From positions 124,001 to 188,000 of IMG/VR virus record IMGVR_UViG_3300005537_000001: a stretch of DNA of 64,000 nt, one strand, 5' to 3'. The position numbers and the translations under genes were made by a program. Numbering within the stretch: the stretch's first letter is position 1; every line of letters starts with the position of its first letter. Positions 21,363 through 63,097 of this stretch are shown here, piece by piece. The notes below the pieces were generated by a model. That model saw only the letters and a list, made by a program, of their open reading frames with translations. It searched no databases and was not told where the DNA came from.

Positions 21363-21381
21363 ACAAGTAAATAAAAGTACT

Positions 21382-31328: not shown

Positions 31329-31718
31329 AAAATTTCTTTGCTCAACGTGATCACCAAAGTTCCTCCACCGGAGCAGCTTGGTTAACAATCATGTACGTTA
31401 GTGGATGGGTGTTGTTACCCCTGCAGGGTTCAGCACGCGCAAACGGTGTCAAGGCTGTTCCACCAAATTCTTGAATGGTTGCTGGTTAGAGAAAATCAGA
31501 TAGTGCTGACTGACCGTCAGATAGTTGCTGGTTAGAATGACCAGATAGATTACCGCATAGTCGAATCAAGCGGTGTAGGTAGGCACAATGGGAATAGTCC
31601 CATCGTGTAATTTGTTCGAAACCTTCGGGTTAGACTCATGATTTTCGGATCATGTAAACTATCGAAGTTCCCAACTGCAACATTTGTTGGGGAATTTTGT
31701 TGATCACGTTGAAATTTT
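31329..31718 (+). ncRNA. Giant (~390 nt) Y-RNA-like structured RNA immediately upstream of Ro60
   Basis: TCAACGTGATCA.CAAAGTTCCTC / GGGGAATTTTG.TGATCACGTTGA long-range stem; CAC-C-GGA/TTTGTT helix; GCAG(C)TTGG/CCAACTGC; internal UUCG hairpins. Confidence 0.65.
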
Positions 31719-31758
31719 GCCGTCGCTAGCAACGATAGCCGCTATAGGAGATCATATC

Positions 31759-48196: not shown

Positions 48197-48574
48197 TTAG
48201 CGTAATGTGGGCTTTGGATTGTCGTAATCGTCTATCTTGTAGAACAGGCTTGTTTCTACCTCGGTGCTTGCAACCATGTCTTCCCATCTGTCAGGAAGAC
48301 CGTTGATAAACATGTTGATGATTTTGGTGTTATCTTCCAAGGCGCAAATTTCATGCTCCTTGGTAGAATCAAAATCATCAAACAGCTCTCCTGCCCGCGC
48401 TATTTTTTGCCAGTCGCGGCCATAGACGCATACCGAACCCTTGAGCACGACAATGTTGTGAAAGTGCTGCTCAATCTTGTGGGCATGCATTCTAATTCCA
48501 GAACCCTTTTGCATGAAGGTGTAGATGGGTCCACAGATGATACCCGATTTGTAGAAATCTATCTTGATGCGCAT
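48197..48574 (-). CDS. Cupin-fold protein in the tail-fibre operon
   Basis: MHAH...H..VVLKGSV...HEICALEDNT. Confidence 0.7.
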   Translation of the reverse strand: MRIKIDFYKSGIICGPIYTFMQKGSGIRMHAHKIEQHFHNIVVLKGSVCVYGRDWQKIARAGELFDDFDSTKEHEICALEDNTKIINMFINGLPDRWEDMVASTEVETSLFYKIDDYDNPKPTLR

Positions 48575-49983
48575 TATGTGTATCTGATAACGATGTGTCC
48601 AACCGTACCATCAGCTGGGTCGGTAGACAGAGATCTGCCATCTCCACCTGGATTGCCGGTACCATTGGTTCCTACGATAGCTGCTCCACCAGCTCCAGGA
48701 ATGCAGATAGATCCGGCGGTGCCTGAATTACCAACTAAGTTTGCGAGGGTGCCACCAGTTCCAACCGCGCCCGCCGCGCCCGCCGTTCCACCATGACCAG
48801 CTCCTGGTGAATTACCGCCAGCACCGCCAGGAGGTCCAGTCATCGTTGTAAATCCTGTAAAAGTTCCAGCTGTAACGCTTGACTGCAATCCAGCTCCACC
48901 CACCGTGCACGATAGCGTGTGGCCGTTCTGCGCTGAAACAGAGTAGGATGATCGCGAGTACCCACCAGAACCTCCACCTCCACCAGCATCAGAGGTGCAT
49001 ATGTTGGTAGAACTGCCGCTACCGCCGGTAGCGCCACCTCCCCACACCTCGATGACCATAGTTGTCGCACCGCTTGGGATAGTTTGGGTTGTGGTTCCAG
49101 CCGCGCTAAGGGTAACGGTTGATGGCGTGAACGGTACGGTTGTGTTTGTTACGCTCCACGTAACCGTGTTTGACGTCGCGCTGGTGTGACCATCAGATAC
49201 AACGCAGTGCATCGTGCCGGAAGTAACGCCACCGTTATCTGCTGCCGTCGCTGTTACGGCTGTAGCTGCTGAGCTTGGCGCGGTTAGGGTACCAGAACCA
49301 GATAAAATTGACCATGAGAATGAATAGGTTCCAGTTCCATTAGCTCCAGCTACCGTAGTTGAAGATGTTGTTCCAGAACCAGATGGCGCGCCTAGCGCGC
49401 CAGAAACCGACACGTTACCAGGCTGGGTACCAATAGTTGTCGCAATGTACGTGTTTGTAATCGTCCAGCTTGCTGAATTTGTGTTGGTCGTACTATTTCC
49501 ATCCGACACGGCACACGTGATGGTTCCGCTCAATGATGAGTTTGCACCAGGTGCCGCCGAAACGCTGGCGACGGTAGACGTTGTGGATCCATTCGTCGTG
49601 TTGGTATTCAGCGTTCCACCAGCCCCGGTTATTGACCAGGTGTAGGTGTAGCCGCTTTGCTTACCCTTTGATCCGACGGTGCTGGTGGTATTAGTTGTTT
49701 GCGACGCGCTTGCTGGCTGTGAGCTTGAAACCGAAATGTTTGAAATACCGGCGGCAACAACGTTAGTCGAACCTATAGTTGCAAATCTTGAGGCAATGTC
49801 GGAGCCACCCTGATCAAATCCAATTCCGCCTGCAGCTGAACCAGAACCGGCCGCGGCGAAGATTGCATTTAGATCGCTGTTTCCAGCCGTAAATCCAGTT
49901 GCGGCGGCTTGAGGCCACCCGGCGATGAGCGGCGCTAGAAGCGAAGCTAAATCTGTACCTGCATGGCGAAAATTGCTTGTCAT
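48574..49983 (-). CDS. Gly-rich tail/receptor-binding accessory protein
   Basis: Ig-like YTWS repeats; IEVWGGGA..GGGGGSGGY glycine-rich domain. Confidence 0.75.
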   Translation of the reverse strand: MTSNFRHAGTDLASLLAPLIAGWPQAAATGFTAGNSDLNAIFAAAGSGSAAGGIGFDQGGSDIASRFATIGSTNVVAAGISNISVSSSQPASASQTTNTTSTVGSKGKQSGYTYTWSITGAGGTLNTNTTNGSTTSTVASVSAAPGANSSLSGTITCAVSDGNSTTNTNSASWTITNTYIATTIGTQPGNVSVSGALGAPSGSGTTSSTTVAGANGTGTYSFSWSILSGSGTLTAPSSAATAVTATAADNGGVTSGTMHCVVSDGHTSATSNTVTWSVTNTTVPFTPSTVTLSAAGTTTQTIPSGATTMVIEVWGGGATGGSGSSTNICTSDAGGGGGSGGYSRSSYSVSAQNGHTLSCTVGGAGLQSSVTAGTFTGFTTMTGPPGGAGGNSPGAGHGGTAGAAGAVGTGGTLANLVGNSGTAGSICIPGAGGAAIVGTNGTGNPGGDGRSLSTDPADGTVGHIVIRYT

Positions 49984-50935: not shown

Positions 50936-51076
50936 CTGTTTACTTTTCCAGATCAGCGTGATAAGATTTAATCTCTTACATGGTAGTCTCCTTTGCACAC
51001 CATGATTCAGGGCTCCATTGGAGCCCTGCTTTTTGATTCTCACCCGCCTAAATACAAAAACAATCCAGGGGTGCTC

Positions 51077-51865
51077 ATGCAATATCTACGTACGACCGAC
51101 ATTCGTCAACAATTCAAAGATCTACTCGCCACCAGAAAATTCACGGCCGTCAACCGTGAAGGATCGATGACGAACTTAGTTGGTAAAACGACAATTGAGA
51201 TAGTTGGAGCTTCATTTATCGCCGACGAAGAGTCAATCTTTGGAAGCGTCAATTGGGATTACGTGAAGCGAGAAGAGGAATGGTACAATTCAATGTCGCT
51301 CAACGTGAACGACATCCCTGGTGGACCGCCCAAAATTTGGAGTTCCGTTGCTGATAAAGACGGATTTATTTGTAGCAACTATGGCTGGTGCATATATTCC
51401 CCAGACAATGGATTTCAACCAATGGACTTGGAACGTAGAGCAACAGGTGCCGCCCCGCAAAAAGTATGGAACATGTATGGTCGCGGCAACAGCATACCAT
51501 GCAATCAATATACCTCGGTAATCGAAGAGCTTAAGAAGAATCCAGAATCGCGCCGCGCCATGATGATCTACACTCGACCATCAATGTGGTTGGATTACAA
51601 CAAAAATGGGCGCTCTGATTTTATGTGCACCAACACTGTGCAGTATCTCATTCGCGATGGTGCCCTTCACGCCGTTGTCCAAATGCGAAGCAATGACGCA
51701 ATCTTCGGCTACAAGAATGACCGCGCGTGGCAGCAGCACGTCCTCGAGAAGGTATCTAAGGATGTTGGCGTTCCAGCTGGAAACCTATACTGGCAGGTTG
51801 GCAGTCTCCACGTTTACGCTCGCCACTATGGCCTGGTTGATCCAACCTGGATACCAATTGAGTGA
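51077..51865 (+). CDS. dCMP hydroxymethylase (T4 gp42-like)
   Basis: SNYGW, DFMCTNTVQYLIRD, MRSNDAIFGYKND, SLHVY; Asp in ND as in gp42 rather than the Asn of thymidylate synthase. Confidence 0.9.
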   Translation: MQYLRTTDIRQQFKDLLATRKFTAVNREGSMTNLVGKTTIEIVGASFIADEESIFGSVNWDYVKREEEWYNSMSLNVNDIPGGPPKIWSSVADKDGFICSNYGWCIYSPDNGFQPMDLERRATGAAPQKVWNMYGRGNSIPCNQYTSVIEELKKNPESRRAMMIYTRPSMWLDYNKNGRSDFMCTNTVQYLIRDGALHAVVQMRSNDAIFGYKNDRAWQQHVLEKVSKDVGVPAGNLYWQVGSLHVYARHYGLVDPTWIPIE

Positions 51866-52245
51866 AGCAGCTATTTCTAGCCGCCTTGATGATGCCAGCT
51901 ATTTCAGCCGCCGGGATCCCGGACATCATTGGAACGGCGGCAGCGAACGGTAGAATAGTTTTTGATGTTGCCATTCATGATACGTCAATCGCTGCGATGG
52001 CGAGCGGTGGTGAAGTGTACCGCAAGATGGGTGAGCGCTCTGAAATTTTCGTCGCCTTCAAGCACAGCAGCAATTCTACCGATTCGACCGAAAACATCAC
52101 GATATTAACCGAAGACCGCTACGCCGCCGGATTTCTCTATCGATTCTCTCCACGAAATTCAGCAAAGATCGGATACATCAGCTTAAGAATCAACGGCTAC
52201 AACTATTCAGCATCTGGCATCGAGCTGATTCACTGCTTTCGCTGA
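51862..52245 (+). CDS. Exported hypothetical protein
   Basis: Signal peptide. Confidence 0.6.
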   Translation: MKQLFLAALMMPAISAAGIPDIIGTAAANGRIVFDVAIHDTSIAAMASGGEVYRKMGERSEIFVAFKHSSNSTDSTENITILTEDRYAAGFLYRFSPRNSAKIGYISLRINGYNYSASGIELIHCFR

Positions 52246-52381
52246 CCAGATTTTTCAACATCCTGAAGAGGATAAATACTACGTCTGATTCAAATGTACA
52301 ACCACCATCACGCGTGGTATAATGGTCATTCATCTTGAATAAGAATCAGATTTTCCCTTTCATAACTTGGAGTATTTTTAA

Positions 52382-53008
52382 ATGAAGAAGATTCTTCTAG
52401 CCCTCGCTTTGACTCTCGGAATGGGTGTTGCAGCTGCGGCGGATCTATCATCTGTCGGATCTACCGGCGTTGAAGCAACCGTTGATTATAGCTACGCTCG
52501 TTCAATTGGCACACCATCATATCTCGCAGAACACCAAGCTCTTGCTGGCGTTCAGGTAAATGCTGGAGCTCTCGGTTCTTTTGGACTTGAGGCTGGTGAC
52601 ACGCAGCTAGTTACCAACTATCGCCTGAACTTCACAACCTTCGCCCTTGGCTACGCTAACGGCTTCAAGGTTGGTTCGCTCAGCGTTGTTGGAAACGTCA
52701 ACTACCTGGTTGCAACGCAGGATAAGTGGTTTTTCAGCGGTCGTAACGGTTCTGCCTCGATCGACGAGGTAATTGGAACCGTAGAAGTGAACGCGCCCAT
52801 TACGTCGAGCGTAAAGTTGTTCGCCGATTACAGCCACGCGTACGCATGGGTTCCTGCCTTAAGCGCTGGTGGTCTTACAAGCAACGGTGCTTCCCTTGGC
52901 GCGTACGTCAACCTTTCCAAGAGCGTGGTAGCTAAAGCTGGCTATACCCGCGATTGGACAGCTGGTAACGCGCAGGGCCTCCTTGCATCTCTGTCGTACA
53001 AGTTTTAA
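52382..53008 (+). CDS. Outer-membrane beta-barrel protein
   Basis: Signal peptide, alternating strands, C-terminal LSYKF beta-signal. Confidence 0.8.
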   Translation: MKKILLALALTLGMGVAAAADLSSVGSTGVEATVDYSYARSIGTPSYLAEHQALAGVQVNAGALGSFGLEAGDTQLVTNYRLNFTTFALGYANGFKVGSLSVVGNVNYLVATQDKWFFSGRNGSASIDEVIGTVEVNAPITSSVKLFADYSHAYAWVPALSAGGLTSNGASLGAYVNLSKSVVAKAGYTRDWTAGNAQGLLASLSYKF

Positions 53009-53021
53009 GCTGACTTGAGTT

Positions 53022-53050
53022 AAAAGCCGAGATTGAATCTCGGCTTTTTT
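53022..53050 (+). terminator. Intrinsic (bidirectional) terminator
   Basis: AAAAGCCGAGA-TTGAA-TCTCGGCTTTTTT. Confidence 0.85.
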
Positions 53051-53099
53051 CTGATCCGGATCCGTGTATATCTGATTGTAATCGTGTTAAAATAAGCGC

Positions 53100-53594
53100 A
53101 TGTATCTAGACGCGGTAATCGAATCAAGAAAAGCCGGAAAACCTACCAGCGAGCTTATTGAGCTATGGCAAAAGGACATTCGTCACACGCTAAACCTAAC
53201 TCGCTTCAAAGGTATCGATCATGAACTCTACAGGGATTTAGCTTCATTCGCGATGCTAACCGTTCTCCGTCATTGGAAATCATTTGACCCGACTAAATCA
53301 GATAATCCACTCGCATGGTTTAGACAGTGCATTCTTGGAGCTATAATTCAAGAGCTGGCACACGAGAAGCGCAACAAGTCAATTACGCGAGATAATAGCC
53401 TAAGAGGTCAACTTGGAATCAATTCTTTGGATAAAGGGGCTATCATCAAGTCAATTCTCAAGCGCATGCGGGATGGATATGATTCGAAGACTCTCCTAGA
53501 CACGATCAATTATGTTCAAAAAGCTGGGTTAAATTTTACCGAATTCGAAGTTATCAAAAAGAGCCTAAAGAATGAAATACGAACAACAAATTGA
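53100..53594 (+). CDS. gp55-like sigma factor domain plus C-terminal shared module
   Basis: SFDPTKSDNPLAWFRQC..AIIQ...EKR resembles T4-like gp55. Confidence 0.65.
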   Translation: MYLDAVIESRKAGKPTSELIELWQKDIRHTLNLTRFKGIDHELYRDLASFAMLTVLRHWKSFDPTKSDNPLAWFRQCILGAIIQELAHEKRNKSITRDNSLRGQLGINSLDKGAIIKSILKRMRDGYDSKTLLDTINYVQKAGLNFTEFEVIKKSLKNEIRTTN

Positions 53595-55302
53595 CGCGGC
53601 ATTCGTTAGACTAGGCTTCTCTCCTCGTGATGGTCAGAGGGAAGCGGTAGATAAGATTCTAACAGCATTCATCGACGAGAAGGCAAAGAACGTCATTCTC
53701 AACGCGTCAACCGGCACCGGCAAGTCAATCATCGCCGCGGCGACAGCTGAAGCTCTGACGGCGGCAAAGGGTGGTAAGGATAATCAGGTGCGTTCGTCCA
53801 TCTCACTCACCGCTACCAACGTTCTTTCGAAACAATACGATGCCACCTTTCACGGGTTGGGAGATGCTGGCAAGTACATCATGATCAAAGGCGCGAACAA
53901 CTACGGTTGTTCAGCTCTATCGACCGCCGGTGAACAAGCAAACGCCGAGCAGTGCGCTTGGTTCACGATGCTGCAAAACCGGGATGAGTTCAGCGGCGTT
54001 ATGCGGGATCACTGCGACAAGTGTGAATATCTCTTGATCAAGAAGCAGAAAAACCTTGTCCGACACCTCACCACAAACTATTCATACTACTTTGTGGATC
54101 GCATGTACACTGGCAAATTTGAGAATAGAGATCTTTTGATTTGGGATGAGGCGCACCTCGTCAACGATCTGTTTAGCGAGCACAACGCTATCTACTTTTC
54201 ACAGAAGCGCATGCATGGCTTCCAAGAGGAAATCGCAGAGACCGTCGGTCTAACCAACGTGCAGATCGCAAAAACTATCTCATCAATCGCGAAGGATCTT
54301 GGTATCAAGGGCAAGATTTGCGAAAGCAACTACATGACGTATCTTACCGCGCTGCAGACAGTCTACAGCTACGCTCGAGATCAAGGTGCCGAGAAAGCCG
54401 AATACGCCCTGCACGGCAATCGAATGAAGGAGTATTCAAAGTACAATCGCTTCATGAACAAATACCGCGGACTGTGCTGCAAGATCAGCGATCTGTTTGA
54501 GCATAACTTTGATCATATCTTTGAGTATAAGGAAGAAGATAAATCGGTTTCGATAAAGCCAATTTTCGTTGGCACCATGATTGATTCGCTGCAAAGCGCT
54601 GAGCACAATCTATTCATGTCGGCCACCATTTCAGAGGAATTTGCGGTCAAAACGCTTAACTTGGATCCAACCGTTACCCGCTTCATCAAGCTTCCTCCAA
54701 GCTTTCCAAAGGAGAATAAGGAAGTCGTGTTCTTCGATACGCTCTCGCTGAGCTACACGTCGCTGCAGGATGCTAAGGTGGTAAAGCAGCTTAGAAGAAA
54801 CGTAGCCAAGATCGTAAAGAAGCACGTTGAAGAGGGAGATCGAGGAATCATTCTCACTCCAAGCTTCAAGCTGCAGGGTGAAATCGTAGACGAGATTAGC
54901 TCCATCAAAGGCTACAAGCTGTTCGAACAGAGACAAGGTGAGAAGCTTGAAAACGTGCTAGTAGCGTTCAAGAGCTACAAAGGTGGACCGGCAGTTTTGA
55001 TTTCTCCATCGCTTTTTGAGGGTGTTGACTTACCCGGTGATCTATCGCGATTTCAGATAATTGTTAAGGCACCATATCCGTCTCTTGGTGACAAGCGCAT
55101 GAAATTTATCCTTGATAAACACCCGTCACTTTACAACATCATCACGATCATGAAGCTGACGCAGGGAGCAGGTCGCTCTGTGCGATCAAAGGATGATTTC
55201 GCGGTCACCTACATGTTGGATAAAAATGCTGAACGACTGTTTACTTCCAGTGCCAACATCTGGCGAGACGAATTTCAACTTCGCTTTACAAAGTTCCTCT
55301 AG
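53572..55302 (+). CDS. DinG/XPD-family helicase
   Basis: PRDGQ, ASTGTGKS, DEAH, EGVDLPGD, QGAGRSVRS; Cys cluster. Confidence 0.9.
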   Translation: MKYEQQIDAAFVRLGFSPRDGQREAVDKILTAFIDEKAKNVILNASTGTGKSIIAAATAEALTAAKGGKDNQVRSSISLTATNVLSKQYDATFHGLGDAGKYIMIKGANNYGCSALSTAGEQANAEQCAWFTMLQNRDEFSGVMRDHCDKCEYLLIKKQKNLVRHLTTNYSYYFVDRMYTGKFENRDLLIWDEAHLVNDLFSEHNAIYFSQKRMHGFQEEIAETVGLTNVQIAKTISSIAKDLGIKGKICESNYMTYLTALQTVYSYARDQGAEKAEYALHGNRMKEYSKYNRFMNKYRGLCCKISDLFEHNFDHIFEYKEEDKSVSIKPIFVGTMIDSLQSAEHNLFMSATISEEFAVKTLNLDPTVTRFIKLPPSFPKENKEVVFFDTLSLSYTSLQDAKVVKQLRRNVAKIVKKHVEEGDRGIILTPSFKLQGEIVDEISSIKGYKLFEQRQGEKLENVLVAFKSYKGGPAVLISPSLFEGVDLPGDLSRFQIIVKAPYPSLGDKRMKFILDKHPSLYNIITIMKLTQGAGRSVRSKDDFAVTYMLDKNAERLFTSSANIWRDEFQLRFTKFL

Positions 55303-55335
55303 TGTGATATAATTGGTCATCCACCGGAGAATTAA

Positions 55336-55920
55336 ATGACACCAAAACAAGTGTATGCTGTAGAGGGCTTGGACCGCCTGGGCAAGTCGACCCTCATTCA
55401 GGGCATCCTCGACAAGCTTGGATATTATCAAGTTATTCACTTTGCAAAACCTCAGCGCCTAAAAATATACGAGGATGCTGCAAAGGTAGATGGCGTCCCG
55501 CATGGTGGTCAAGCAGCTTGGCACTATCAAGCTGAGAGCTTCCGAAATTCCATGCTGATAGCAAGTTCAGGCGCTCGGATTATCTTTGATCGTTGGCACA
55601 TTGGCGAGGCCGTTTATTCCCCACTTTACAGAAACTATTCTGGAGATTACGTGTTTAACCAAGAGCGACACTCCAATCTTGACCAGCATCCAAGCCTTCG
55701 ATTGATCCTTCTGACTGAGAATTTCAAATTCTCTCAACATTTTGTAGATGATGGTAAGTCCCTTGGATCAGGATCGTTGCGTGATCGATGGGATGAGCAG
55801 GGCCGTTTCACCGGCGCGTTTGACAGATCAAGCATCAAGGATAAGCGCGTCGTGTGCGTTACGGCACCAGACGGCAATTTTCGTCCAAAGGAAGATATTT
55901 TAGAGGAGGCCCTATCATGA
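55336..55920 (+). CDS. dNMP (thymidylate-like) kinase
   Basis: EGLDRLGKST, IIFDRWH.GE.VY. Confidence 0.8.
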   Translation: MTPKQVYAVEGLDRLGKSTLIQGILDKLGYYQVIHFAKPQRLKIYEDAAKVDGVPHGGQAAWHYQAESFRNSMLIASSGARIIFDRWHIGEAVYSPLYRNYSGDYVFNQERHSNLDQHPSLRLILLTENFKFSQHFVDDGKSLGSGSLRDRWDEQGRFTGAFDRSSIKDKRVVCVTAPDGNFRPKEDILEEALS

Positions 55921-56412
55921 GCTCACTTCCGTACGTTTTAGTTTACATTCTTCTAAGCAGCACAACCGGAGAGCGAGTTGGTAATCCGGTGTTAGTGAGC
56001 GGCCCGTATGAAAGCGGAGCTGCATGCGTAAAGCATCAGGCTAAACTGCCAACCCAGCGTCCAGACAAAAACGGCAACATCAAGTTTTTCGAGTGCAATC
56101 CAACTAATCAATACATAGCTCCGGCGGAATCATCAACATGAGCATCACGGCAGGGGATGGACCCATTCATTTGGCAGAGTTTAGTATCTGCAAAAAGCAA
56201 CCACACTCCGAATCTAGCGTTACGGTTCCTGTGTGGATAACTCAATCAAGCTTGGATGGACTTCAGGCGCTCATTCGCTTTACCTATGGTTTGAGAGCCT
56301 CGGGTAAAGGATCGATTCCGGGTGAGTTTGAGTTGATAATGTTCTACCGCCAGCTTGCGTCAGCTATTCGAAGTGCCGACAACAAGGCTAATGGAATTGG
56401 AGAAGAATCGGC

Positions 56413-57600
56413 ATGAGAAGCAATCCTAACGCACACATGAAGGTCGGCGTAATCAAGTTGGGCGCGCGGATAGCCTTCAACGCTAACGATACGTCTGGCG
56501 CGAATGGTGAGGCGCGTAGCATCATCAACATGCTTGACTTAGGAGGAGCGGATGTTCATATCTTCACGAAGATACTTGCTAAAGATACTCTTAACAAGAT
56601 GTTTGTATGGCATGATCTTGGAAAAGAGGACTACGACACAAAAGGTCTAGATGTACTCCTAGTCATCAACGGTAACGTGAACTTTTTTGGTGGCGCTGAG
56701 GATGTTTCCCAGCTCCTAAACTACAAGATAATCAACGAATTCGACGGTCCAGTTTTCTACGCGTACTGTGATCCAGAGCTGACTCTCAAGCAGGTATGGC
56801 CGTCGGTGGCGAAGAAGCCATGGGCAAAGAATTGGGAGCGTGAGGAGCTTGAAATCGTTCGAAACGATATCATCTATCTCAGCCAGCCATACGACGTGTT
56901 AGCGGTGGCAAAGAACTTCAGCAAGAGCGAAGTCAAGCCAATGAGCGTGAAGCACTTTCCATTCGAACAGTTTCCATGCTTGACCGCGTGCTCTTACCTT
57001 GCTGAATTTGCAGATGACAATGGACCGCTGAAATTCAATCCAAATCCAGAGGTTGATCTCTCCTACGGTGGCACGATGCGCGGTGGTAAGCGCATCGAGA
57101 AAATGCTCAAATTCTACTTTGGTCATCCCGATATTTCAGTTGAAATGTTCGGGAAGATTGACGCATCAGATTTTGTTCCATGTAAGCTCGGAACAGTTCC
57201 TATACCGTACCCCCACTTTTCTGGTCCGGTCAAATATGACCAGATGATTCCCAAGATGAACAAGGCCTTGGCGCACTGCGTTATCGGTGATCCATACTAC
57301 GAAGAGATCAACGACATGCCGCAGCGCACCTACGAGAGCATCATGGCTAACGTGGTGACGTTTATCGATCATGACATGGATAAGCTCCGACGCGTGTATG
57401 GCCGCGACAAAGTTCTAGCTGATTTTCTATACGTTAAGGATCGACAGGAGCTTAGCGAGAAGATCCTGCTCCTGAAGACAGACACCAACCTTCGACGTCA
57501 AATCTTGGACGATCAAGCTAAAGCTGTCAACTTCAACGCTTACGAGTACAGCGCAAACTTCGTAAAGGAATTGAATTCAGCGTGGTGGCGTGCAAAATGA
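56413..57600 (+). CDS. DNA beta-glucosyltransferase homolog (T4 BGT-like)
   Basis: VINGNVNFFGG, QVWPSVAKKPWA, YGGTMRGGKRIEKM, IGD..Y, RTYES mirror T4 BGT. Confidence 0.88.
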   Translation: MRSNPNAHMKVGVIKLGARIAFNANDTSGANGEARSIINMLDLGGADVHIFTKILAKDTLNKMFVWHDLGKEDYDTKGLDVLLVINGNVNFFGGAEDVSQLLNYKIINEFDGPVFYAYCDPELTLKQVWPSVAKKPWAKNWEREELEIVRNDIIYLSQPYDVLAVAKNFSKSEVKPMSVKHFPFEQFPCLTACSYLAEFADDNGPLKFNPNPEVDLSYGGTMRGGKRIEKMLKFYFGHPDISVEMFGKIDASDFVPCKLGTVPIPYPHFSGPVKYDQMIPKMNKALAHCVIGDPYYEEINDMPQRTYESIMANVVTFIDHDMDKLRRVYGRDKVLADFLYVKDRQELSEKILLLKTDTNLRRQILDDQAKAVNFNAYEYSANFVKELNSAWWRAK

Positions 57601-57817
57601 AGCTTAACATCACAACACCAGTCAAACCAATACCCCACCGCCTCACCAGCTGCTTTGAAGTTGTTTCAATTCAGTCAGAGCGGGAATCTACGATGGAAAT
57701 TCGTGGAGGATTTGATGATGTGCGCCCAATAATTGATCTGTTAATGTCAAAAGGAAAGAAATTGTCCATCTTTTGGTATGATATCTTCGGCGACAAGTAC
57801 AACGTAGAGGTTCAAGA

Positions 57818-58561
57818 ATGAATACTGGTAGTCATCACGGTGATCCATCACTTACGCTATACGAACTGGAAACATGCGTAGAGCTTGTTAAGTGGATAAA
57901 GAATGGTCTGCCCCGCTGGCTTCCAAGCGCTGACGCCATCAAAGAGTGGAGCAAGAATCAAAATGCATCTACGATGGCGGTCCGTGGACTAATTTCAGAC
58001 AGACAAATTAAAACGTGCAACGACATGGTTCGGTGGATCCGAATTGCCCGAGCTGAACGCTATGATAAGCTCGGGGATTCACCGAACTGGTTGCCACAGA
58101 TTTCAGACTTGTTGAAATCAAGGTTGTTCTGGCGCTTGCGCGACGGAAAGGATCCTCTACCGCATCCACCTCCCACAGCATATTCATGCCCTTGGTATGA
58201 ACTGATTGAAGATGGTCGAGCTCATTGGGCATACGATTGCTTCGTGCACAAGCCGGGTGAAGCTGGATTATGGGGTCGATATGAAGTGCCAATTGCAAAC
58301 ATAGGTCAATGCCCATACGAAGTGCTGACGTGGTCTGACAAAGAAGAAACCATTCCATTTTCTGTAAGCTATGGTCCATACCTCTTTAGGACGTTCTACG
58401 GTCCGTTTGAAACGCATCAGTTTGACAGTGAAACCAAAACAGTTTCGCGCATTACCATCAATGGTTGGTGGATCAAGTACGTTTCGGACCCTACGGCGGA
58501 GGGTGCGTTCGATATGAAGGATGAAGAACTGCCGTATAAAATCGGTCAAAGCAGGGACTGA
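57818..58561 (+). CDS. hypothetical protein
   Basis: ORF in operon. Confidence 0.65.
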   Translation: MNTGSHHGDPSLTLYELETCVELVKWIKNGLPRWLPSADAIKEWSKNQNASTMAVRGLISDRQIKTCNDMVRWIRIARAERYDKLGDSPNWLPQISDLLKSRLFWRLRDGKDPLPHPPPTAYSCPWYELIEDGRAHWAYDCFVHKPGEAGLWGRYEVPIANIGQCPYEVLTWSDKEETIPFSVSYGPYLFRTFYGPFETHQFDSETKTVSRITINGWWIKYVSDPTAEGAFDMKDEELPYKIGQSRD

Positions 58562-59058
58562 TGCGCTTCACGAAGCAATATACGTTAAGTGATTGCGGTC
58601 CAGTAGCTGTCCTCAATATTCTCAAGTGGGCAGGGATGAAGGTAAGCTACAAGGATCACATCAAGCACCTCAAGAAAGAATGCAAGTTCGTTAATGACGC
58701 GTCCTTTATCGGTGTTAGATGGTGGAATATTCGAGCTGCCCTGAAAAAGATTGGTAGTGGAGCGTTGAGTGTTAGGACGTATCATGTCAGAGATATCGAA
58801 GTGCTACAGCGACATGTATCACGAGGCGGTGCTTTTATACTACGGTATCGATCAGCCCCAAGAACAGAGGAGAACCCTCCGGGGCATTTTCATTACAGCG
58901 CTGTCGTACCTCATGCTGACGGCGAAAGCTTTTTATGGCTGAATCACAACCCGGAACGTATGAAGATGGTTGTGACGGCTAGAATTTTGGAATCACATGT
59001 GCTGAGTCAATCACAATTCGGGGATGTACCCGTCGCGCTGCTGATCAGAAAAATCTGA
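58561..59058 (+). CDS. C39-like cysteine peptidase
   Basis: Q...DCGP, HYSAV. Confidence 0.65.
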   Translation: MRFTKQYTLSDCGPVAVLNILKWAGMKVSYKDHIKHLKKECKFVNDASFIGVRWWNIRAALKKIGSGALSVRTYHVRDIEVLQRHVSRGGAFILRYRSAPRTEENPPGHFHYSAVVPHADGESFLWLNHNPERMKMVVTARILESHVLSQSQFGDVPVALLIRKI

Positions 59059-59115
59059 TCGGACTTTCCCGTAAATAAAGCCGAGCCCGGACTTCGGGTC
59101 AAGCGGAGAAATAAA

Positions 59116-61005
59116 ATGAACATCGTAATTTTGGCTGGTGGAACCGGTTCTATCGCCCTTCAAACTGGCCTCTATGAGCTGCTAGATAAGCAGATCGGCG
59201 ATATTGACACCAAGATAATCGTCAACTGCTACGATAATGGTTTAAGTACGGGAAGTGTCCGCAAGGTAATGGATGGAAAAATCCTTGGGCCTTCTGATCT
59301 TCGAAAGAATCAAACTACGCGTCTCCAGCTTGAAAATCCAAAATCTCCGTGGCTAAATTTTCTAAACATTCGCTTTACCGTAGAGTCATCAAAGGCTAGA
59401 AGCTTCTGTCACGATAAGATTACTCAGCTTGCGGTAACCGGTGGTATTTCCGATAGTCTGACTGATCTTCGTCTCGCTGTAGATGCATACTTCAGCATAG
59501 CGGTAGCTGAGAAGATAGATTATAACGACTTCTCACTAGCCAACATCATCTACGCTGGTTTGGCCAAGCTGAATGGGTACTCGCTGCGAAAGGCAGCAAC
59601 GATAATGGCCGGATTGATGGGCATCAAGGATAACGTCCTTCTCAATGATGATCGCTCTTTGTTTCTTGGAGCCATCACCAAATCCGGTAAGAGAATCGCC
59701 GATGAGGGTGACATCGTTTCGTGGGGCGACAAGGAAGATCCATTCGTGGACATCTTCTTTACGGATGCAGATGGATATGACACAGATGAAGTTGGCACCA
59801 TGCCGCATCTTTGTGAAGAAGCTGAGCAGGCAATTCTCAGCGCCGACCTTGTAATTCTTTCATCTGGAACGCTTTGGTCATCCTTGATACCGACCTACGC
59901 GTCGATCGGATTTGATCGAGCGATCAACAACACTAAAGCCAAAATTTTGATGATCTTGAACCGTCAGCCGGATAAGGATTCACCCGGTCAGACTGCATCC
60001 GAAATCATTGACATTTTAATTCCTAAGTATTTTCCAACCAAGCTTATTCACGTTGTTGGTGATTCGAGCGGAAGTGAGCAGATGAATACGCTTGATGATA
60101 ATTCTCTCGATAAGATCGCATCATTCGCCACGTTTAACATGGGCCCGCCGGTGGATGTTGCAAAGGACACGCGCCACCAGCACATGCAGCTTGGCCGCGC
60201 CGTCGCGCAAACATATTTCAAAGACTATCTAAACAGCGATTACTACATGTTTGACTATGACGACACTTTGGTTGGACGTGGAAATAGGTGGCCGCTCGCC
60301 TCACGCGAAAATACAGCTGGCATCTCCAGGCTCAACAGCATGGAATTCAATCGCGCCGGTAAGCACGCGATCCAGATAGGTATCTGCACCGGAAATACCG
60401 TAAAATCGGTCAACTTGCGTGGAGCGCCGGGATCAATGTTTACGACGCTCGAAGTTTTCGCTGATGGTGGTGCCAATAAGTATTCTTACGACACATCACC
60501 ATCAGGAAATGACGATGACGGCGTCGCCTCCAAGCTGATGATCTGCGTTAACCAAAATCTGATCATTCCACCGGAAACCATCAACACCATCGTAACAAAT
60601 CTGAGAGATGCCGGAATACCTCTGTCTAAGATTGACAATCGTGGCAACGTTCTCATCGCCATCAAGCCAATCGACCCCGAATATCGACAGCTTGTTTTGC
60701 AAGTAGCAAAATCGATCGTTGAACGATTCGGGCTTAACGTTCGAATCGCCGGCAGAACTACGGTCGAAATCTGCAAACCAAATCTGTCAAAGATAGATGC
60801 CATCAAATATGTCTTCAAGGCAAAAAACGCAAAGTCAATTACCTACATCGGAGATGAGCTCGACTCAGGAAACGACGCGGTCGTTGAAAAGCTATCACAT
60901 GAACTTCCAACCCTCAAGTGCCTACACGTTAAGAACCCGGTTCAGACGGCGTTCTTCATCAAGACGCTCATCCACCACATTGAAAGGAAAATGTGTGTCA
61001 GCTGA
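59116..61005 (+). CDS. CofD/YvcK-like domain fused to HAD phosphatase/phosphomutase
   Basis: LAGGTG, DNGLSTG..R, GPSDLR, ADLVILSSGTLWSSLIP; FDYDDTL, K..AI, YIGD...GND. Confidence 0.8.
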   Translation: MNIVILAGGTGSIALQTGLYELLDKQIGDIDTKIIVNCYDNGLSTGSVRKVMDGKILGPSDLRKNQTTRLQLENPKSPWLNFLNIRFTVESSKARSFCHDKITQLAVTGGISDSLTDLRLAVDAYFSIAVAEKIDYNDFSLANIIYAGLAKLNGYSLRKAATIMAGLMGIKDNVLLNDDRSLFLGAITKSGKRIADEGDIVSWGDKEDPFVDIFFTDADGYDTDEVGTMPHLCEEAEQAILSADLVILSSGTLWSSLIPTYASIGFDRAINNTKAKILMILNRQPDKDSPGQTASEIIDILIPKYFPTKLIHVVGDSSGSEQMNTLDDNSLDKIASFATFNMGPPVDVAKDTRHQHMQLGRAVAQTYFKDYLNSDYYMFDYDDTLVGRGNRWPLASRENTAGISRLNSMEFNRAGKHAIQIGICTGNTVKSVNLRGAPGSMFTTLEVFADGGANKYSYDTSPSGNDDDGVASKLMICVNQNLIIPPETINTIVTNLRDAGIPLSKIDNRGNVLIAIKPIDPEYRQLVLQVAKSIVERFGLNVRIAGRTTVEICKPNLSKIDAIKYVFKAKNAKSITYIGDELDSGNDAVVEKLSHELPTLKCLHVKNPVQTAFFIKTLIHHIERKMCVS

Positions 61006-61810
61006 TCTATACATAATCGCGGCTGGGAAGGGTTCACGGATGGCCGTGAACATACCAAAGGCGCTGGTGCCCATCGTAGAGGAACCCTGTCTGACCACCA
61101 CGCTGCAGCAGATCGGGCACAAGTTCAACAACGTCTTCGTAGTAACCAATGAGGATGTTCAGGATCAATGGGAAGCGTATTTCAACAAGCTGGATAACGC
61201 ATATCCAGAGCTTGCGAAAAATGTCGTCAACATTCCCATCAGATCGGGACTGGGTGATGGTCACGCCGTGCTGTGGGGGTTGAAGGGCGCGATGGATCTC
61301 CAACCAAAGAATGTTGGATCGCGGTGGGAAGCTGCCGATGATATCGTTATCGCGTGGGGCGACGTATTTTTTCCTCAAGCTGAAATCATTGATGAGCTGC
61401 TGTCCAAGCGGCGGCTGAATGGTGTCATTCCAGCCGTTCGCGAGAATACACCATACGTTTCTCTGCTGACCGATGAGCGCATGCTGTGCAAGTCAGCCGA
61501 CTTTTCAAAGTATGGCGAAAATCACCCAACCGGATTTCACGATCAATCCGTGTTTAAATTTGTTAGACCACAGTTGAATCAAGCTTTAACAACCCTGCAT
61601 TCTGCATTCTGGAAGAATGGTCGCTACATAACTCCAGGTGGTGAGCTGTCGCTGCTTCACGTCTTTCACTACATGTACAACATCCAACAGGCGTGTAGCG
61701 TGTACGAAACTGATTATCCCACCCTATCATTCAACACGCTTGATGAAGTTGCCGGCATTCAGCGAGAAATCGATTTAAAGTGGAAAGAAAAATTTAGGAA
61801 AAATTCATGA
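60995..61810 (+). CDS. Sugar-phosphate nucleotidyltransferase (GT-A/GlmU-N-like)
   Basis: IIAAGKGSRM...PKALVPI, GDGHAV, WGD, FNT..E. Confidence 0.85.
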   Translation: MSADLYIIAAGKGSRMAVNIPKALVPIVEEPCLTTTLQQIGHKFNNVFVVTNEDVQDQWEAYFNKLDNAYPELAKNVVNIPIRSGLGDGHAVLWGLKGAMDLQPKNVGSRWEAADDIVIAWGDVFFPQAEIIDELLSKRRLNGVIPAVRENTPYVSLLTDERMLCKSADFSKYGENHPTGFHDQSVFKFVRPQLNQALTTLHSAFWKNGRYITPGGELSLLHVFHYMYNIQQACSVYETDYPTLSFNTLDEVAGIQREIDLKWKEKFRKNS

Positions 61811-62466
61811 CCCGCCCCCTCCTCGTAACGCTAACAGCTCCAACGTGCTCTGGCAAAAGCTACCTTCTCACATACATCAGGGACACCGCAAAGCGTCCAT
61901 GCCTAACCTCAACAACTACTCGTCCTCCTCGAGAAGGAGAAGTTGAAGGACTGGATTATCACTTTATCTCCGTCGAAGAATCAAAAAGCATCGAAGCTGC
62001 TGGTGGTTTCGCTGAGCTAGCGATCTTTCGCGGGCACCGCTACGGTGTTACAAAGCAGGAGTTTAAAAAGAAGCTGGAGATGGGTCCAGCGTTTCTGATC
62101 GTTGAGCCAAGCGGTATCGATCACTACGTGCAGCCAGCTCTCGATATGGGTGCTGTCTGGTTGAAGTATTTCGTTTACACCAAACCAGCTGAACTCGTTG
62201 AACGTTTCAAGAAGCGGTTTGAAGCTGACGTTGCTAAGGTGCTCACCCCCATTGTGAGTCGCGAGGGCTATATTTCGCTTACACCAAATTCCAAAGTGAT
62301 TGACACTGTCAAATCCTACACTGATCGTCTTATCCATCTGCTCGGACCTGAAGCGACGTGGTTTGAAGCCAAGCAGTGGGACGGCATCCTGTATGGTGAC
62401 AAGCACCCAACCGAAAACTTGAAGATCATCGACGCCGATATCAGATATAAGCTGGATAACAACTGA
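61807..62466 (+). CDS. gmk: Guanylate kinase-like protein
   Basis: APTCSGKS, TTTRPPREGEVEGLDYHF, YG. Confidence 0.85.
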   Translation: MTRPLLVTLTAPTCSGKSYLLTYIRDTAKRPCLTSTTTRPPREGEVEGLDYHFISVEESKSIEAAGGFAELAIFRGHRYGVTKQEFKKKLEMGPAFLIVEPSGIDHYVQPALDMGAVWLKYFVYTKPAELVERFKKRFEADVAKVLTPIVSREGYISLTPNSKVIDTVKSYTDRLIHLLGPEATWFEAKQWDGILYGDKHPTENLKIIDADIRYKLDNN

Positions 62467-62500
62467 ACGAAGCAAGATTCTAACGAGAGTAAATAACAAC

Positions 62501-63097
62501 ATGAAATTCACTGACGAAGAAGCCCTTCAACTTATGCGCGAGGGTGCCAAACTACCTAAGCCAGGGTTTGGAGCTTTGTCTCCAAGAGCGAACATGGTAT
62601 CAGATCCAAAGAACGCTATAACTCCTGCTGAAGCGTTGAACAAAATTGAAAAATGGCGTGAAGGTCTACCAACTGACTGGGTTCAAGATATTGCCGATAT
62701 GCATACGAAATTTGGTTTCAATGAAAAAACCAAAAAAATGGATACTAATACATTGAAGGCTCTTCTTAACTTTAGAATTGCATTTCTCAATGAAGAGTTA
62801 ACTGAATTGCAAGAAGCAAAAAGCGCCGACGATGTTGTAGACGCATGTATCGATTTAATCGTTATCGCGATAGGAACTCTCAATCTATTTGAGGTAGATG
62901 CTAATCTAGCATGGAATCGCGTTCACGGTGCCAACATGTCAAAACAAGCCGGAATTAAACCTGGTCGTAAATTTGCATCTGTTGGTCTTGATCTCATGAA
63001 GCCTGATGGTTGGACAGCTCCGACTCACGTAGACAACGTAGGACTGCTGCAATACTGCTTCGGTGTTCAACCATCACAACCATGGTCGGGAAAATAA
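62501..63097 (+). CDS. MazG/PRA-PH-like dNTP pyrophosphatase
   Basis: EELTEL...VDACID, VHGANMSK, KPDGW..P. Confidence 0.8.
   Translation: MKFTDEEALQLMREGAKLPKPGFGALSPRANMVSDPKNAITPAEALNKIEKWREGLPTDWVQDIADMHTKFGFNEKTKKMDTNTLKALLNFRIAFLNEELTELQEAKSADDVVDACIDLIVIAIGTLNLFEVDANLAWNRVHGANMSKQAGIKPGRKFASVGLDLMKPDGWTAPTHVDNVGLLQYCFGVQPSQPWSGK

What the first reader, a model, noticed from the sequence alone, without database searches (positions are those of the whole stretch)
51077..63097. hm5C glycosylation pathway with an unusual sugar-donor cassette
gp42-like hydroxymethylase, dNMP kinases, dNTP pyrophosphatase and a BGT homolog imply glycosylated hydroxymethyl-cytosine (established for T4, which uses host UDP-glucose). 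The adjacent CofD/YvcK-HAD fusion and sugar nucleotidyltransferase suggest the phage makes its own NDP-sugar, so the DNA modification may be a sugar other than glucose (inference).
Basis: partly seen in the sequence, partly recalled or inferred. Interest (0 to 1): 0.68.

Follow-up and report, generated by a model that had tools for sequence, protein, structure and literature searches.

The report
Phage hmC glycosylation with own sugar-donor genes
A 368-kb jumbo phage carries the T4-type genes for hydroxymethyl-cytosine DNA together with a conserved, undescribed three-gene unit (DNA glycosyltransferase, YvcK/CofD-like protein fused to a phosphomannomutase-like domain, sugar-1-phosphate nucleotidyltransferase) that most likely makes the activated sugar put on its DNA; which sugar cannot be told from sequence.

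Summary
The thymidylate-synthase homolog is a true T4 gp42-type dCMP hydroxymethylase. It has the 5hmdCMP signature, not the one of 5-hydroxycytosine synthases. The T4 beta-glucosyltransferase (BGT) homolog keeps the catalytic Asp and the UDP-binding Arg/Glu residues.

The "CofD-HAD" protein is really two domains. The N-terminal domain is YvcK/GlmR-like. The C-terminal domain is a HAD-IIB domain whose nearest solved relatives are phosphomannomutases and an alpha-phosphoglucomutase. The next gene folds like GlmU/RmlA sugar-1-phosphate nucleotidyltransferases.

The order BGT, then fusion, then nucleotidyltransferase (NTase) is conserved. Of 36 IMG/VR contigs carrying the fusion, 34 also carry each partner within 10 kb. 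It is also in the cultured Ralstonia phage RsoM2USA.

The fusion/NTase pair also lies in bacterial polysaccharide loci, beside or fused to unrelated glycosyltransferases (GT1, GT2, GT8). Two bacterial copies nest inside the phage clade.

The best reading is a portable NDP-hexose supply module feeding the DNA glycosyltransferase. The phage has no epimerase, so the sugar probably comes straight from a hexose-6-phosphate (glucose, mannose or GlcN(Ac)). Its identity, and the role of the YvcK/CofD-like domain, stay open.

This is a new variant of a known kind: phage-made donors for DNA glycosylation are already known.

The parts
51077..51865 (+). dCMP hydroxymethylase (T4 gp42 ortholog). It carries a 29-residue insertion relative to T4 gp42.
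   Evidence: E 2e-69 to 1b49. In E. coli ThyA numbering it has C146, N177D, L143D and D169 kept. The terminator-like hairpin at 51008-51028 favours the start at 51077.
55336..55920 (+). P-loop nucleoside-monophosphate kinase-like protein; candidate dNMP kinase.
   Evidence: phrog_761 'thymidylate kinase' 5.5e-10. Pfam and NCBIfam matches are weak. No PDB sequence match. Conserved at this position in 21 of 36 related viral loci. A promoter-like site lies at 55285-55313.
56413..57600 (+). DNA glycosyltransferase, a homolog of T4 beta-glucosyltransferase (GT-B fold).
   Evidence: PF09198 3.8e-20; phrog_7922 1.5e-47; E 1e-30 to 1bgt. The equivalents of T4 D100, R191, R195, R269 and E272 are kept. 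Identity is 46-47% to the homologs in the only two INPHARED phages that also hold the fusion and the nucleotidyltransferase, and at most about 31% to all other records.
57582..59058 (+). Three small ORFs of unknown function (79, 247 and 165 aa) between the glycosyltransferase and the fusion gene. Most relatives lack them here.
   Evidence: No family match, apart from a weak Peptidase_C39_2 hit (0.0022) for the 165-aa ORF. The Atlas search gave no usable hit. The 247-aa ORF has homologs at this position in relatives L005/L006 and L039.
59116..60210 (+). YvcK/GlmR-like (CofD-family) domain, residues about 1-365 of the fusion protein.
   Evidence: PF01933 9.3e-21. TIGR01826 (YvcK) 2e-17, below its cut-off. 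Foldseek top hits are UPF0052/YvcK structures 2ppv, 2o2z, 2hzb and 2q7x (TM by target 0.73-0.81), ahead of CofD 3c3e and FbiA 6uvx (about 0.65). The GGTG, D40, S44/G46/R49 and GPSD61 motifs are invariant in 38 homologs.
60238..61005 (+). HAD-IIB phosphomannomutase/alpha-phosphoglucomutase-like domain, residues about 375-629 of the fusion protein.
   Evidence: D380-x-D382-x-T384 is invariant across the 38 homologs; the window's motif IV reads G579-D580 ... G585-N586-D587, of which G579 and G585 are invariant there and D580/N586/D587 only among the closer phage-type homologs. Profile search against PDB: 4bnd alpha-PGM 9.4e-11, PMM2 3e-8, phosphatases weaker. Foldseek: 4bnd, PMM1/2 and protozoan or fungal PMMs rank ahead of trehalose-6-P phosphatase. 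Invariant R509 and R524 align with the cap arginines of PMM (plus my own knowledge of PMM2 R123/R141).
60995..61810 (+). Sugar-1-phosphate nucleotidyltransferase (271 aa, GTG start overlapping the end of the fusion gene).
   Evidence: PF12804 3e-10. AF2 model pLDDT 90. Foldseek best hits are GlmU uridyltransferase domains (TM by query 0.73-0.79), RmlA, UGPase, HddC, MurU and LicC; CofC, IspD and MobA are not among the listed top matches. It is the only such gene in the genome.
61807..62466 (+). Guanylate-kinase-like NMP kinase; candidate hmdCMP/dNMP kinase.
   Evidence: PF00625 6.4e-13; TIGR03263 3.2e-18, below its cut-off; phrog_1815 6e-27. Syntenic in 18 of 36 viral loci.
62501..63097 (+). 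MazG/PRA-PH-like nucleoside-triphosphate pyrophosphohydrolase; candidate dCTPase.
   Evidence: PF01503 2.1e-8; phrog_671 1.1e-19; weak match to the MazG-like dUTPase DR2231.

Best explanation
The phage replaces cytosine with 5-hydroxymethylcytosine by the T4 route: dCMP hydroxymethylase, NMP kinases, and probably a MazG-type dCTPase. It then glycosylates the hydroxymethyl group on DNA with a BGT-type GT-B enzyme. The activated sugar comes, at least in part, from a phage-borne supply module.

Proposed steps of that module:
1. The PMM/alpha-PGM-like HAD-IIB domain converts a host hexose-6-phosphate to hexose-1-phosphate.
2. The GlmU/RmlA-like nucleotidyltransferase condenses it with an NTP to give an NDP-hexose.
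3. The BGT homolog uses this NDP-hexose as donor.
4. The fused YvcK/GlmR-like domain is part of the same unit. It probably binds the nucleotide-sugar (as a sensor or accessory nucleotidyl/phospho-transferase), but its reaction is not known.

Shown: the gene identities, catalytic motifs, folds, synteny, fusions and phylogenetic mobility. Inferred: the substrates, the order of steps and the link to the DNA modification.
For: 1. Hydroxymethylase: E 2e-69 to T4 gp42, with the 5hmdCMP residue signature (the signature is taken from PMC13326640).

2. BGT homolog: it aligns with most of T4 BGT and keeps the equivalents of D100, R191, R195, R269 and E272.

3. Synteny in phages. Among 36 IMG/VR loci with the fusion, 34 have a BGT homolog and 34 the NTase within 10 kb, mostly in the order BGT, fusion, NTase. 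This holds even where the fusion is only 27-34% identical. The same is seen in a 331-kb contig and in RsoM2USA across its record ends. In INPHARED the fusion and the NTase each hit exactly the same 2 of 50,697 records, and these two also hold the two best BGT hits.

4. Fusions. CofD-HAD-NTase (L003), NTase-CofD-GT2 (L029), CofD-GT2 (L031) and GT2-CofD (L025).

5. Portability. The pair is adjacent in most of the 30 bacterial loci. Two loci examined (L010, L025) are polysaccharide clusters with GT8 or GT2/GT4 enzymes, and L003/L004 carry a GT1 beside the pair. In one phage locus it sits near a TET-associated glycosyltransferase instead of BGT.

6. Phylogeny. Two bacterial copies, flanked by IS elements and next to a GT1, nest inside the phage clade (97-100 SH-aLRT). 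So the pair works with a non-DNA glycosyltransferase, which argues for a diffusible donor.

7. Folds. The HAD domain is nearest to PMM/alpha-PGM by profile and by fold. The NTase is nearest to GlmU/RmlA-type sugar-1-P nucleotidyltransferases.

8. Genome content. There is no other NTase, no SDR epimerase, no SIS isomerase and no GT2 in the complete 368-kb genome.
Against: - No biochemical datum exists for any member of either family.
- A catalytic role for the YvcK/CofD-like domain is not explained by a simple mutase-plus-pyrophosphorylase route.
- The deeply conserved NTase/CofD-like pairing recalls CofC/CofD, where the CofD partner transfers a phospho-group from the NDP intermediate. That would mean extra or different chemistry.
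- HAD-IIB mutases and phosphatases cannot be told apart with certainty from sequence.
- T4 and most BGT-bearing phages need no such genes, so the pair might only boost UDP-glucose.
- Complex prediction of the fusion with the NTase gave no verdict.
Confidence: 0.62

Rival explanations
1. Supply booster only. The module makes ordinary UDP-glucose (alpha-PGM-like mutase plus a UGPase-like enzyme). The DNA then carries plain glucosyl-hmC as in T4, and the genes merely free a 368-kb phage from the host's pgm/galU capacity.
For: The best profile hit of the HAD domain is the L. lactis alpha-phosphoglucomutase 4bnd. The best, though weak, PDB sequence hit of the NTase is a UTP-glucose-1-phosphate uridylyltransferase. 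The genome has no epimerase, dehydratase or isomerase. The BGT homolog keeps T4's UDP-binding residues.
Against: BGT homologs linked to the pair form their own sequence group: 38-66% identity to the window's copy, against about 26-31% for T4-type ones. That would fit a changed donor, but also plain phylogeny. In bacteria the pair sits inside strain-specific polysaccharide loci, where special donors are usual.
Confidence: 0.3
2. CofC/CofD-like phosphodiester chemistry. The NTase makes an NDP-activated compound. The CofD-like domain transfers its phospho-moiety (for example hexose-1-phosphate) to a hydroxyl, either hmC itself or the sugar placed by BGT. The base would then carry a phosphodiester-linked group.
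For: The NTase/CofD-like adjacency is the most conserved feature of all loci, with or without the HAD domain, and includes NTase-CofD-GT2 fusions. It mirrors the CofC-CofD pairing of F420 synthesis (my knowledge). The N-terminal glycine motif and acidic residues of the CofD family are invariant.
Against: The domain is nearer to YvcK/GlmR than to CofD/FbiA. The NTase is GlmU/RmlA-like, not CofC-like. Near-identical modules work beside a GT1 in bacteria, so a DNA-specific acceptor is unlikely. The fused PMM-like domain fits donor synthesis better.
Confidence: 0.1
3. The fusion and the NTase are unrelated to DNA. They could serve a virion or host-surface glycan, or general carbohydrate metabolism, and lie next to BGT only by synteny inherited within one phage lineage.
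For: In bacteria the pair serves polysaccharide loci. The genome holds a GT-D-like gene and a weak GT1-like ORF elsewhere.
Against: Adjacency to BGT persists over very deep divergence, with the fusion down to 27-29% identity. Where BGT is missing, another cytosine-modification gene stands close by: TAGT in L059 and a C5-methylase in L065. The genes overlap with nucleotide-metabolism genes in one co-directional block.
Confidence: 0.06

Closest known systems
T4 hmC glucosylation pathway (gp42, gp1, gp56, alpha/beta-glucosyltransferases)
   Same: It has a gp42 ortholog with the same active-site signature, a BGT homolog with conserved catalytic and UDP-binding residues, NMP kinase-like genes and a MazG-like pyrophosphatase.
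   Different: T4 relies on host UDP-glucose. Here a mutase-like fusion and a nucleotidyltransferase are built into the operon. The phage is a 368-kb jumbo phage related to RsoM2USA, not a Straboviridae member. BGT identity to T4 is only about 26%.
Phage NDP-arabinose pathway for arabinosyl-5-hydroxycytosine (RB69, DLP3, HY126: arabinose-5-P isomerase, AfhE NTase-kinase, AfhF HAD phosphatase)
   Same: A phage encodes its own sugar-nucleotide synthesis next to a thymidylate-synthase homolog and DNA glycosyltransferases. It includes a HAD-superfamily enzyme and a nucleotidyltransferase (PMC13326640).
   Different: The base is hmC, not 5hoC: Asp169 is kept rather than D169N. There is no SIS isomerase. 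The fusion protein and the NTase show no kinase domain. The HAD domain is class IIB and PMM-like rather than GmhB-like. A YvcK/CofD-like domain is present, and that paper mentions none.
Phage MT/TET/glycosyltransferase clusters with partner epimerases (Burke et al., bioRxiv 10.1101/2023.12.21.572611)
   Same: The concept is the same: phage clusters adjust the sugar-nucleotide pool for 5hmC glycosylation. One relative (L059) pairs the module with a TET-associated glycosyltransferase.
   Different: Donor tailoring there is by epimerases acting on existing NDP-sugars. Here the synthesis starts from a sugar phosphate. That paper mentions no CofD, mutase or nucleotidyltransferase.
YvcK/GlmR (UDP-sugar-binding protein; GlmS activator in B. 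subtilis, accessory uridyltransferase in Listeria)
   Same: It is the best structural and sequence match of the N-terminal domain, and it also has a link to nucleotide-sugar metabolism (PMC10128056, PMC6171935 listed).
   Different: The score is far below the family cut-off (63.6 against 196 bits). The domain is fused to a PMM-like domain and paired with an NTase and glycosyltransferases. The yvcJ-glmR-yvcL context is absent.
CofC/CofD (FbiD/FbiA) of coenzyme F420 biosynthesis
   Same: It has the Pfam CofD domain, and a nucleotidyltransferase gene always lies beside it.
   Different: Structural similarity to CofD/FbiA is lower than to YvcK. The NTase folds like GlmU/RmlA. No F420 context was seen, and the partners are glycosyltransferases.
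Eukaryote-type phosphomannomutase / L. lactis alpha-phosphoglucomutase (HAD-IIB)
   Same: It has the DxDxT motif, the long GD-x4-GND motif IV, two cap arginines, and the best profile and fold matches.
   Different: Identity is only about 17%. The domain is fused to a CofD-family domain. Its activity and sugar preference are untested.

Membership tests
T4-type dCMP hydroxymethylase (5hmdCMP synthase) | Thymidylate-synthase fold with catalytic Cys (ThyA C146), Asp at ThyA N177 (cytosine specificity) and an acidic residue at L143. Asp169 must be kept, because D169N marks 5hodCMP synthases. | tested here: met
   E 2e-69 to 1b49. The residues are D, C, D, D at positions 143/146/169/177 in the window. 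The same holds in all TS-family homologs found in trio-bearing loci and records (the 29 alignment rows). The criterion comes from PMC13326640.
T4 beta-glucosyltransferase family (GT63) | Similarity over most of BGT's length, with the catalytic Asp100 and the UDP-binding Arg191, Arg195, Arg269 and Glu272. | tested here: met
   PF09198 72.7 bits (cut-off 27). phmmer E 1e-30 over residues 71-373 against 51-332 of 1bgt, with all five positions conserved in the printed alignment. The residue roles are from my own knowledge of the T4 BGT structures.
T4 beta-glucosyltransferase family (GT63) | Uses UDP-glucose and transfers glucose to hmC in DNA. | not testable with these tools
   Neither donor nor acceptor can be read from sequence. 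The pair-linked homologs form a separate identity group.
T4 hmC pathway accessory enzymes | A dCTPase that removes dCTP, and a dNMP kinase that accepts hmdCMP. | tested here: inconclusive
   A MazG/PRA-PH-like protein and two P-loop kinase-like proteins are present and syntenic. None is a sequence ortholog of T4 gp56 or gp1 by the searches run.
CofD / FbiA (LPPG:Fo 2-phospho-L-lactate transferase) | Closest relatives are CofD/FbiA, with a CofC-type partner and an F420 gene context. | tested here: not met
   The Pfam domain is present. But the PDB sequence hits are only UPF0052/YvcK proteins. YvcK structures reach TM 0.73-0.81 against about 0.65 for CofD/FbiA. The partner NTase is GlmU/RmlA-like, and the neighbours are glycosyltransferases.
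YvcK/GlmR (TIGR01826) | Score above the family cut-off, and the yvcJ-glmR-yvcL context. | tested here: not met
   63.6 bits against a cut-off of 196. The context differs. It resembles YvcK but is not a member of the equivalog group.
HAD-IIB phosphomannomutase / alpha-phosphoglucomutase | DxDxT nucleophile motif, a PMM-type extended motif IV, cap arginines for the distal phosphate, and PMMs as nearest relatives. | tested here: met
   D380/D382/T384, R509 and R524 are invariant across the 38 homologs; G579/G585 are invariant there, and D580/N586/D587 among the closer homologs. Profile hits: 4bnd 9.4e-11 and PMM2 3e-8, against trehalose-P phosphatase 1e-3. The fold ranking is the same. Mutase activity itself is not testable here.
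Sugar-1-phosphate nucleotidyltransferase (GlmU N-domain / RmlA type) | N-terminal G-x-G-[ST]-R ... K motif, a GT-A-like fold with a sugar-binding subdomain, and nearest structures being sugar-1-P NTases. | tested here: met
   The AAGKGSR...PK motif is present. The model has pLDDT 90. GlmU, RmlA, UGPase, HddC and MurU are the best matches, with TM by query up to 0.79. Pfam assigns PF12804, not PF00483.
Phage NDP-arabinose (Afh) pathway | Arabinose-5-P isomerase (SIS), a bifunctional NTase-kinase, a GmhB-like HAD phosphatase and a D169N thymidylate-synthase homolog. | tested here: not met
   The genome has no SIS domain. Neither the fusion nor the NTase shows a kinase domain. Asp169 is kept.

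The most novel reading that the evidence does not exclude
The YvcK/CofD-like domain is a true phosphotransferase working on the NDP-sugar made next door, as CofD works on CofC's product. The phage base would then not be a simple glycosyl-hmC. It would carry a phosphodiester-linked hexose-1-phosphate (or another phospho-group), or the glycosyltransferase would use a donor of a new chemical type. The same reaction would then explain the unknown function of this branch of the CofD/YvcK family in bacterial polysaccharide loci.
Probability: 0.12. Interest if true: 0.85.

Novelty: new variant of a known kind. Interest (0 to 1): 0.62.

Why it matters
Glycosylated cytosines decide whether phage DNA survives restriction, CRISPR and type IV systems, and each new sugar changes that outcome.

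This unit is widespread. It is in at least 36 IMG/VR contigs and in hundreds of metagenomic homologs. It is also in one cultured phage of a plant pathogen, RsoM2USA. Yet it is absent from PHROGs and from the searchable open literature.

It offers three things:
- a testable new route by which large phages secure or diversify their DNA-sugar donor;
- a natural experiment on the unresolved biochemical role of the YvcK/GlmR/CofD family, given its repeated fusion to a mutase, a nucleotidyltransferase and glycosyltransferases;
- possibly new enzymes for making nucleotide-sugars or for labelling 5hmC.

Tried and rejected
- Membership in F420 CofC/CofD was considered and rejected.
- The Afh arabinose pathway and 5-hydroxycytosine were rejected.
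- The bacterial GT1 next to the module shows no sequence similarity to the BGT homolog. The trio was therefore not inherited as one block with its glycosyltransferase.
- Complex prediction of the fusion with the NTase gave no verdict (score 0.01). It is evidence neither for nor against binding.
- The Atlas search for the 247-aa ORF gave no usable hit. PHROGs has no family for the fusion.
- The Tet_JBP family was not found in five related phage records, but the control search found nothing anywhere either, so this says little.
- Paper searches for CofD together with phage DNA modification, and for 'CofD-like', found nothing relevant.
- Promoter and terminator scans were at chance level overall.
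- The big representative-protein search, the reads tools and alternative genetic codes were not used.
- One call failed on a wrong reading frame and was repeated without that item.
- The treekit careful search did not finish, so the tree cited is the quick IQ-TREE run with SH-aLRT support only.

Full report
**Source and observation.**
The window is bases 124001-188000 of a 368,054-bp IMG/VR virus record with direct terminal repeats, estimated complete, so this is a jumbo phage. From 50 kb to the end of the window almost all long ORFs are on the + strand and tightly packed. The nucleotidyltransferase starts at the GTG at 60995, which overlaps the stop of the preceding gene and gives the N-terminal AAGKGSR motif. 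A 9-bp GC-rich hairpin with a T-run at 51008-51028 lies inside the alternative long form of the hydroxymethylase ORF. This supports the start at 51077.

**The base.**
The thymidylate-synthase homolog matches T4 dCMP hydroxymethylase at E 2e-69, against about 1e-9 for true thymidylate synthases. A 2026 paper showed that some phage thymidylate-synthase homologs with the cytosine-specific Asp make 5-hydroxycytosine rather than hmC. That paper offers Asp169-to-Asn (E. coli ThyA numbering) as their diagnostic (PMC13326640). I therefore checked the four key positions. The window enzyme has Asp at 143, Cys at 146, Asp at 169 and Asp at 177, as T4 gp42 does. The same holds for every thymidylate-synthase homolog I could find in phages that share the cassette. 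The precursor is therefore 5hmdCMP. Two P-loop kinase-like genes and a MazG/PRA-PH-like pyrophosphatase are syntenic with it. They plausibly play the parts of T4 gp1 and gp56, but they are not orthologs of those proteins, so this step is inferred.

**The glycosyltransferase.**
The 395-aa protein aligns with most of T4 BGT's length (tblastn residues 8-373). It keeps the equivalents of the catalytic Asp100 and of Arg191, Arg195, Arg269 and Glu272 (the residue roles are from my knowledge of the T4 BGT structures). It is the only BGT homolog in the genome.

**The 'CofD-HAD' protein.**
An AlphaFold2 model built on 38 homologs is confident, with pLDDT 92 and pTM 0.92.
- The N-terminal domain is nearest to the UPF0052/YvcK structures (TM by target 0.73-0.81). 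It is clearly further from CofD and FbiA (about 0.65). Sequence searches agree, but the score is far below the YvcK family cut-off.
- The C-terminal domain is a HAD-IIB domain. Its best matches by fold and by profile are phosphomutases: L. lactis alpha-phosphoglucomutase 4bnd (9.4e-11), then Plasmodium, human, fungal and trypanosomatid phosphomannomutases. Phosphatases of the same class score much lower.
- The nucleophile motif D380-x-D382-x-T384 is invariant across the 38 homologs. The PMM-style long motif IV (G579-D580 ... G585-N586-D587 in the window) has G579 and G585 invariant there, and D580, N586 and D587 invariant among the closer homologs. Two invariant arginines, R509 and R524, align with the cap arginines that hold the distal phosphate in PMM (the PMM2 R123/R141 roles are from my knowledge).

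**The nucleotidyltransferase.**
Its model (pLDDT 90) matches the uridyltransferase domain of GlmU best (TM by query up to 0.79). RmlA, UDP-glucose pyrophosphorylase, HddC, MurU and LicC follow. CofC, IspD and MobA do not appear among the listed top matches. It is the only such gene in the genome.

**Comparative evidence in phages.**
- In INPHARED (50,697 records) the fusion and the nucleotidyltransferase each hit exactly two records, and they are the same two: Ralstonia phage RsoM2USA and the 462-kb uncultured phage LR756500. These two also carry the two best BGT hits (46-47% identity, against at most about 31% for the other 119 records).
- In RsoM2USA the three genes are contiguous across the record ends.
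- The word search found more than 480 homologs of the fusion and 274 of the nucleotidyltransferase, on contigs up to 368 kb.
- A scan of IMG/VR gave 36 loci with the fusion. Of these, 34 have a BGT homolog and 34 the nucleotidyltransferase within 10 kb, usually directly in the order BGT, fusion, NTase. This holds even when the fusion is only 27-34% identical to the window's.
- The two loci without BGT are telling. One has a TET-associated DNA glycosyltransferase 1.8 kb upstream, and the other a C5-cytosine methyltransferase 2.3 kb upstream.

**Comparative evidence in bacteria.**
- In GTDB genomes a CofD-like gene and an NTase homolog are adjacent in most of the 30 loci found.
- Two examined loci are surface-polysaccharide clusters with priming transferase, epimerases and GT8 or GT2/GT4 enzymes.
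- Fusions occur in several combinations: CofD-HAD-NTase, NTase-CofD-GT2, CofD-GT2 and GT2-CofD.
- Two bacterial copies sit next to a GT1 (EryCIII-like) glycosyltransferase that shows no similarity to BGT. They are flanked by IS elements and share 47-54% (fusion) and 58-63% (NTase) identity with the window's proteins.
- In a quick maximum-likelihood tree these two nest inside the phage clade with 97-100 SH-aLRT support. One viral copy nests inside the Bacillota clade.

**Interpretation.**
The pair travels between phages and bacteria and works beside at least five unrelated glycosyltransferase families: BGT, TAGT, GT1, GT2 and GT8. The simplest common denominator is a soluble activated donor, not an enzyme that touches DNA. 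Together with the mutase-like and pyrophosphorylase-like folds, this gives the proposed route:
1. hexose-6-phosphate is converted to hexose-1-phosphate;
2. hexose-1-phosphate plus NTP gives NDP-hexose;
3. the NDP-hexose is used to glycosylate hmC.

The genome has no SDR epimerase or dehydratase, no SIS isomerase and no GT2. The sugar should therefore be one that exists as a 6-phosphate in the host: glucose, mannose, or glucosamine/N-acetylglucosamine. The nucleotide carrier is also unknown. I cannot decide between plain UDP-glucose (a supply booster for a genome with roughly 1.7e5 cytosines; my estimate from the GC content) and a different donor.

The separate sequence group formed by pair-linked BGT homologs hints at a changed donor, but shared ancestry would explain it equally well.

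**The open part.**
The YvcK/CofD-like domain is the most conserved partner of the nucleotidyltransferase. It is present even where the HAD domain is absent, and its family motifs are invariant. Known members of the superfamily do one of two things:
- they transfer a phospho-group from an NDP-activated compound (CofD/FbiA), or
- they bind UDP-sugars, with a reported accessory uridyltransferase activity (GlmR; papers listed).

A sensor or accessory role fits the donor-supply model. A CofD-like phosphotransfer would mean a phosphodiester-containing product, and I keep that as the novel case. Complex prediction gave no verdict.

**Novelty.**
Phage-encoded donor synthesis for DNA glycosylation is known. 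Examples are the NDP-arabinose pathway, a UDP-galactose mutase and partner epimerases. This module, however, appears in no paper I could search and has no PHROG family. I rate it a new variant of a known kind. It has a cultured representative, RsoM2USA, on which the decisive nucleoside analysis can be done.

Noticed in passing
window 199-272 and 2682-2759 (+); tRNA array 15898-21869 (+): The window holds 22 (ARAGORN) to 24 (Rfam) tRNA genes. Two have anticodon CUA, so they are amber-suppressor type (ARAGORN labels them 'Pyl'). This may point to TAG read-through or recoding somewhere in this jumbo phage. The genes assigned in this finding are open under table 11.
   Followed up: no
window 37421-39379, 40687-42105, 42063-43613 (+): A complete PrkA / DUF444 (YeaH-like) / SpoVR (YcgB-like) trio sits on the phage, with very strong Pfam scores (2e-153, 5.5e-104, 8.5e-134). 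It corresponds to the bacterial yeaG-yeaH-ycgB stress module.
   Followed up: no
window 31684-33393 (+): A Ro60/TROVE protein with a vWA domain (Rsr-like) lies downstream of the tRNA array. A partner Y-RNA-like RNA was not looked for beyond the Rfam gathering scan, which found only tRNAs.
   Followed up: partly
window 53100-53594 and 53572-55302 (+): A sigma-70 region-2-like protein (PHROG 'late sigma transcription factor') and a ResIII/Helicase_C_2 DNA helicase sit between the hydroxymethylase and the kinase. The helicase is syntenic in 17 of 36 related loci.
   Followed up: partly
window 51503-51589 (+) (residues 143-171 counted from the TTG at 50993): The hydroxymethylase carries a 29-residue insertion with no counterpart in T4 gp42, between the two aligned blocks.
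   Followed up: no
L059:7247-8218 and L065:5768-6979: In the two related viral loci without BGT, the fusion/NTase pair lies near other cytosine-modification genes: a TET-associated glycosyltransferase (PF20691, 8.9e-26) in L059 and a C5-cytosine methyltransferase (PF00145, 7e-76) in L065. No Tet_JBP domain was detected in those records, but that search found nothing in the controls either.
   Followed up: partly
L003:2494-5181; L004:10001-14182: These bacterial copies of the module comprise a CofD-HAD-NTase triple fusion and a Steroidobacteraceae trio with a GT1. They lie beside IS66 or DDE transposase genes and nest inside the phage clade, which suggests transfer from phage to bacterium.
   Followed up: partly
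L025:7044-9236; L029:7179-9977; L031:4889-6955: CofD-like domains are fused to GT2 glycosyltransferases, and in L029 also to the NTase. They occur in SAR86, Pseudobdellovibrionaceae and Bryobacterales genomes. The SAR86 locus (L025) is a polysaccharide cluster; the surroundings of L029 and L031 were not examined. This looks like an uncharacterised branch of the CofD/YvcK family.
   Followed up: partly
G000:C1 about 99.4-101.1 kb (L081:946-2729), outside the window: A 359-aa ORF gives a weak, below-cut-off GT1 signal in the genome search but no Pfam hit on rescoring. It is followed by a GT-D fold-like protein (PF22882, 1.4e-13). These may be further glycosylation genes of unknown target.
   Followed up: partly
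window 43610-48169 (-) and 48574-49983 (-): A 1519-aa protein without any Pfam match and a 469-aa protein with a glycine-rich domain lie on the opposite strand, just upstream of the cassette. GC content is locally raised there (0.51-0.53, against about 0.47).
   Followed up: no
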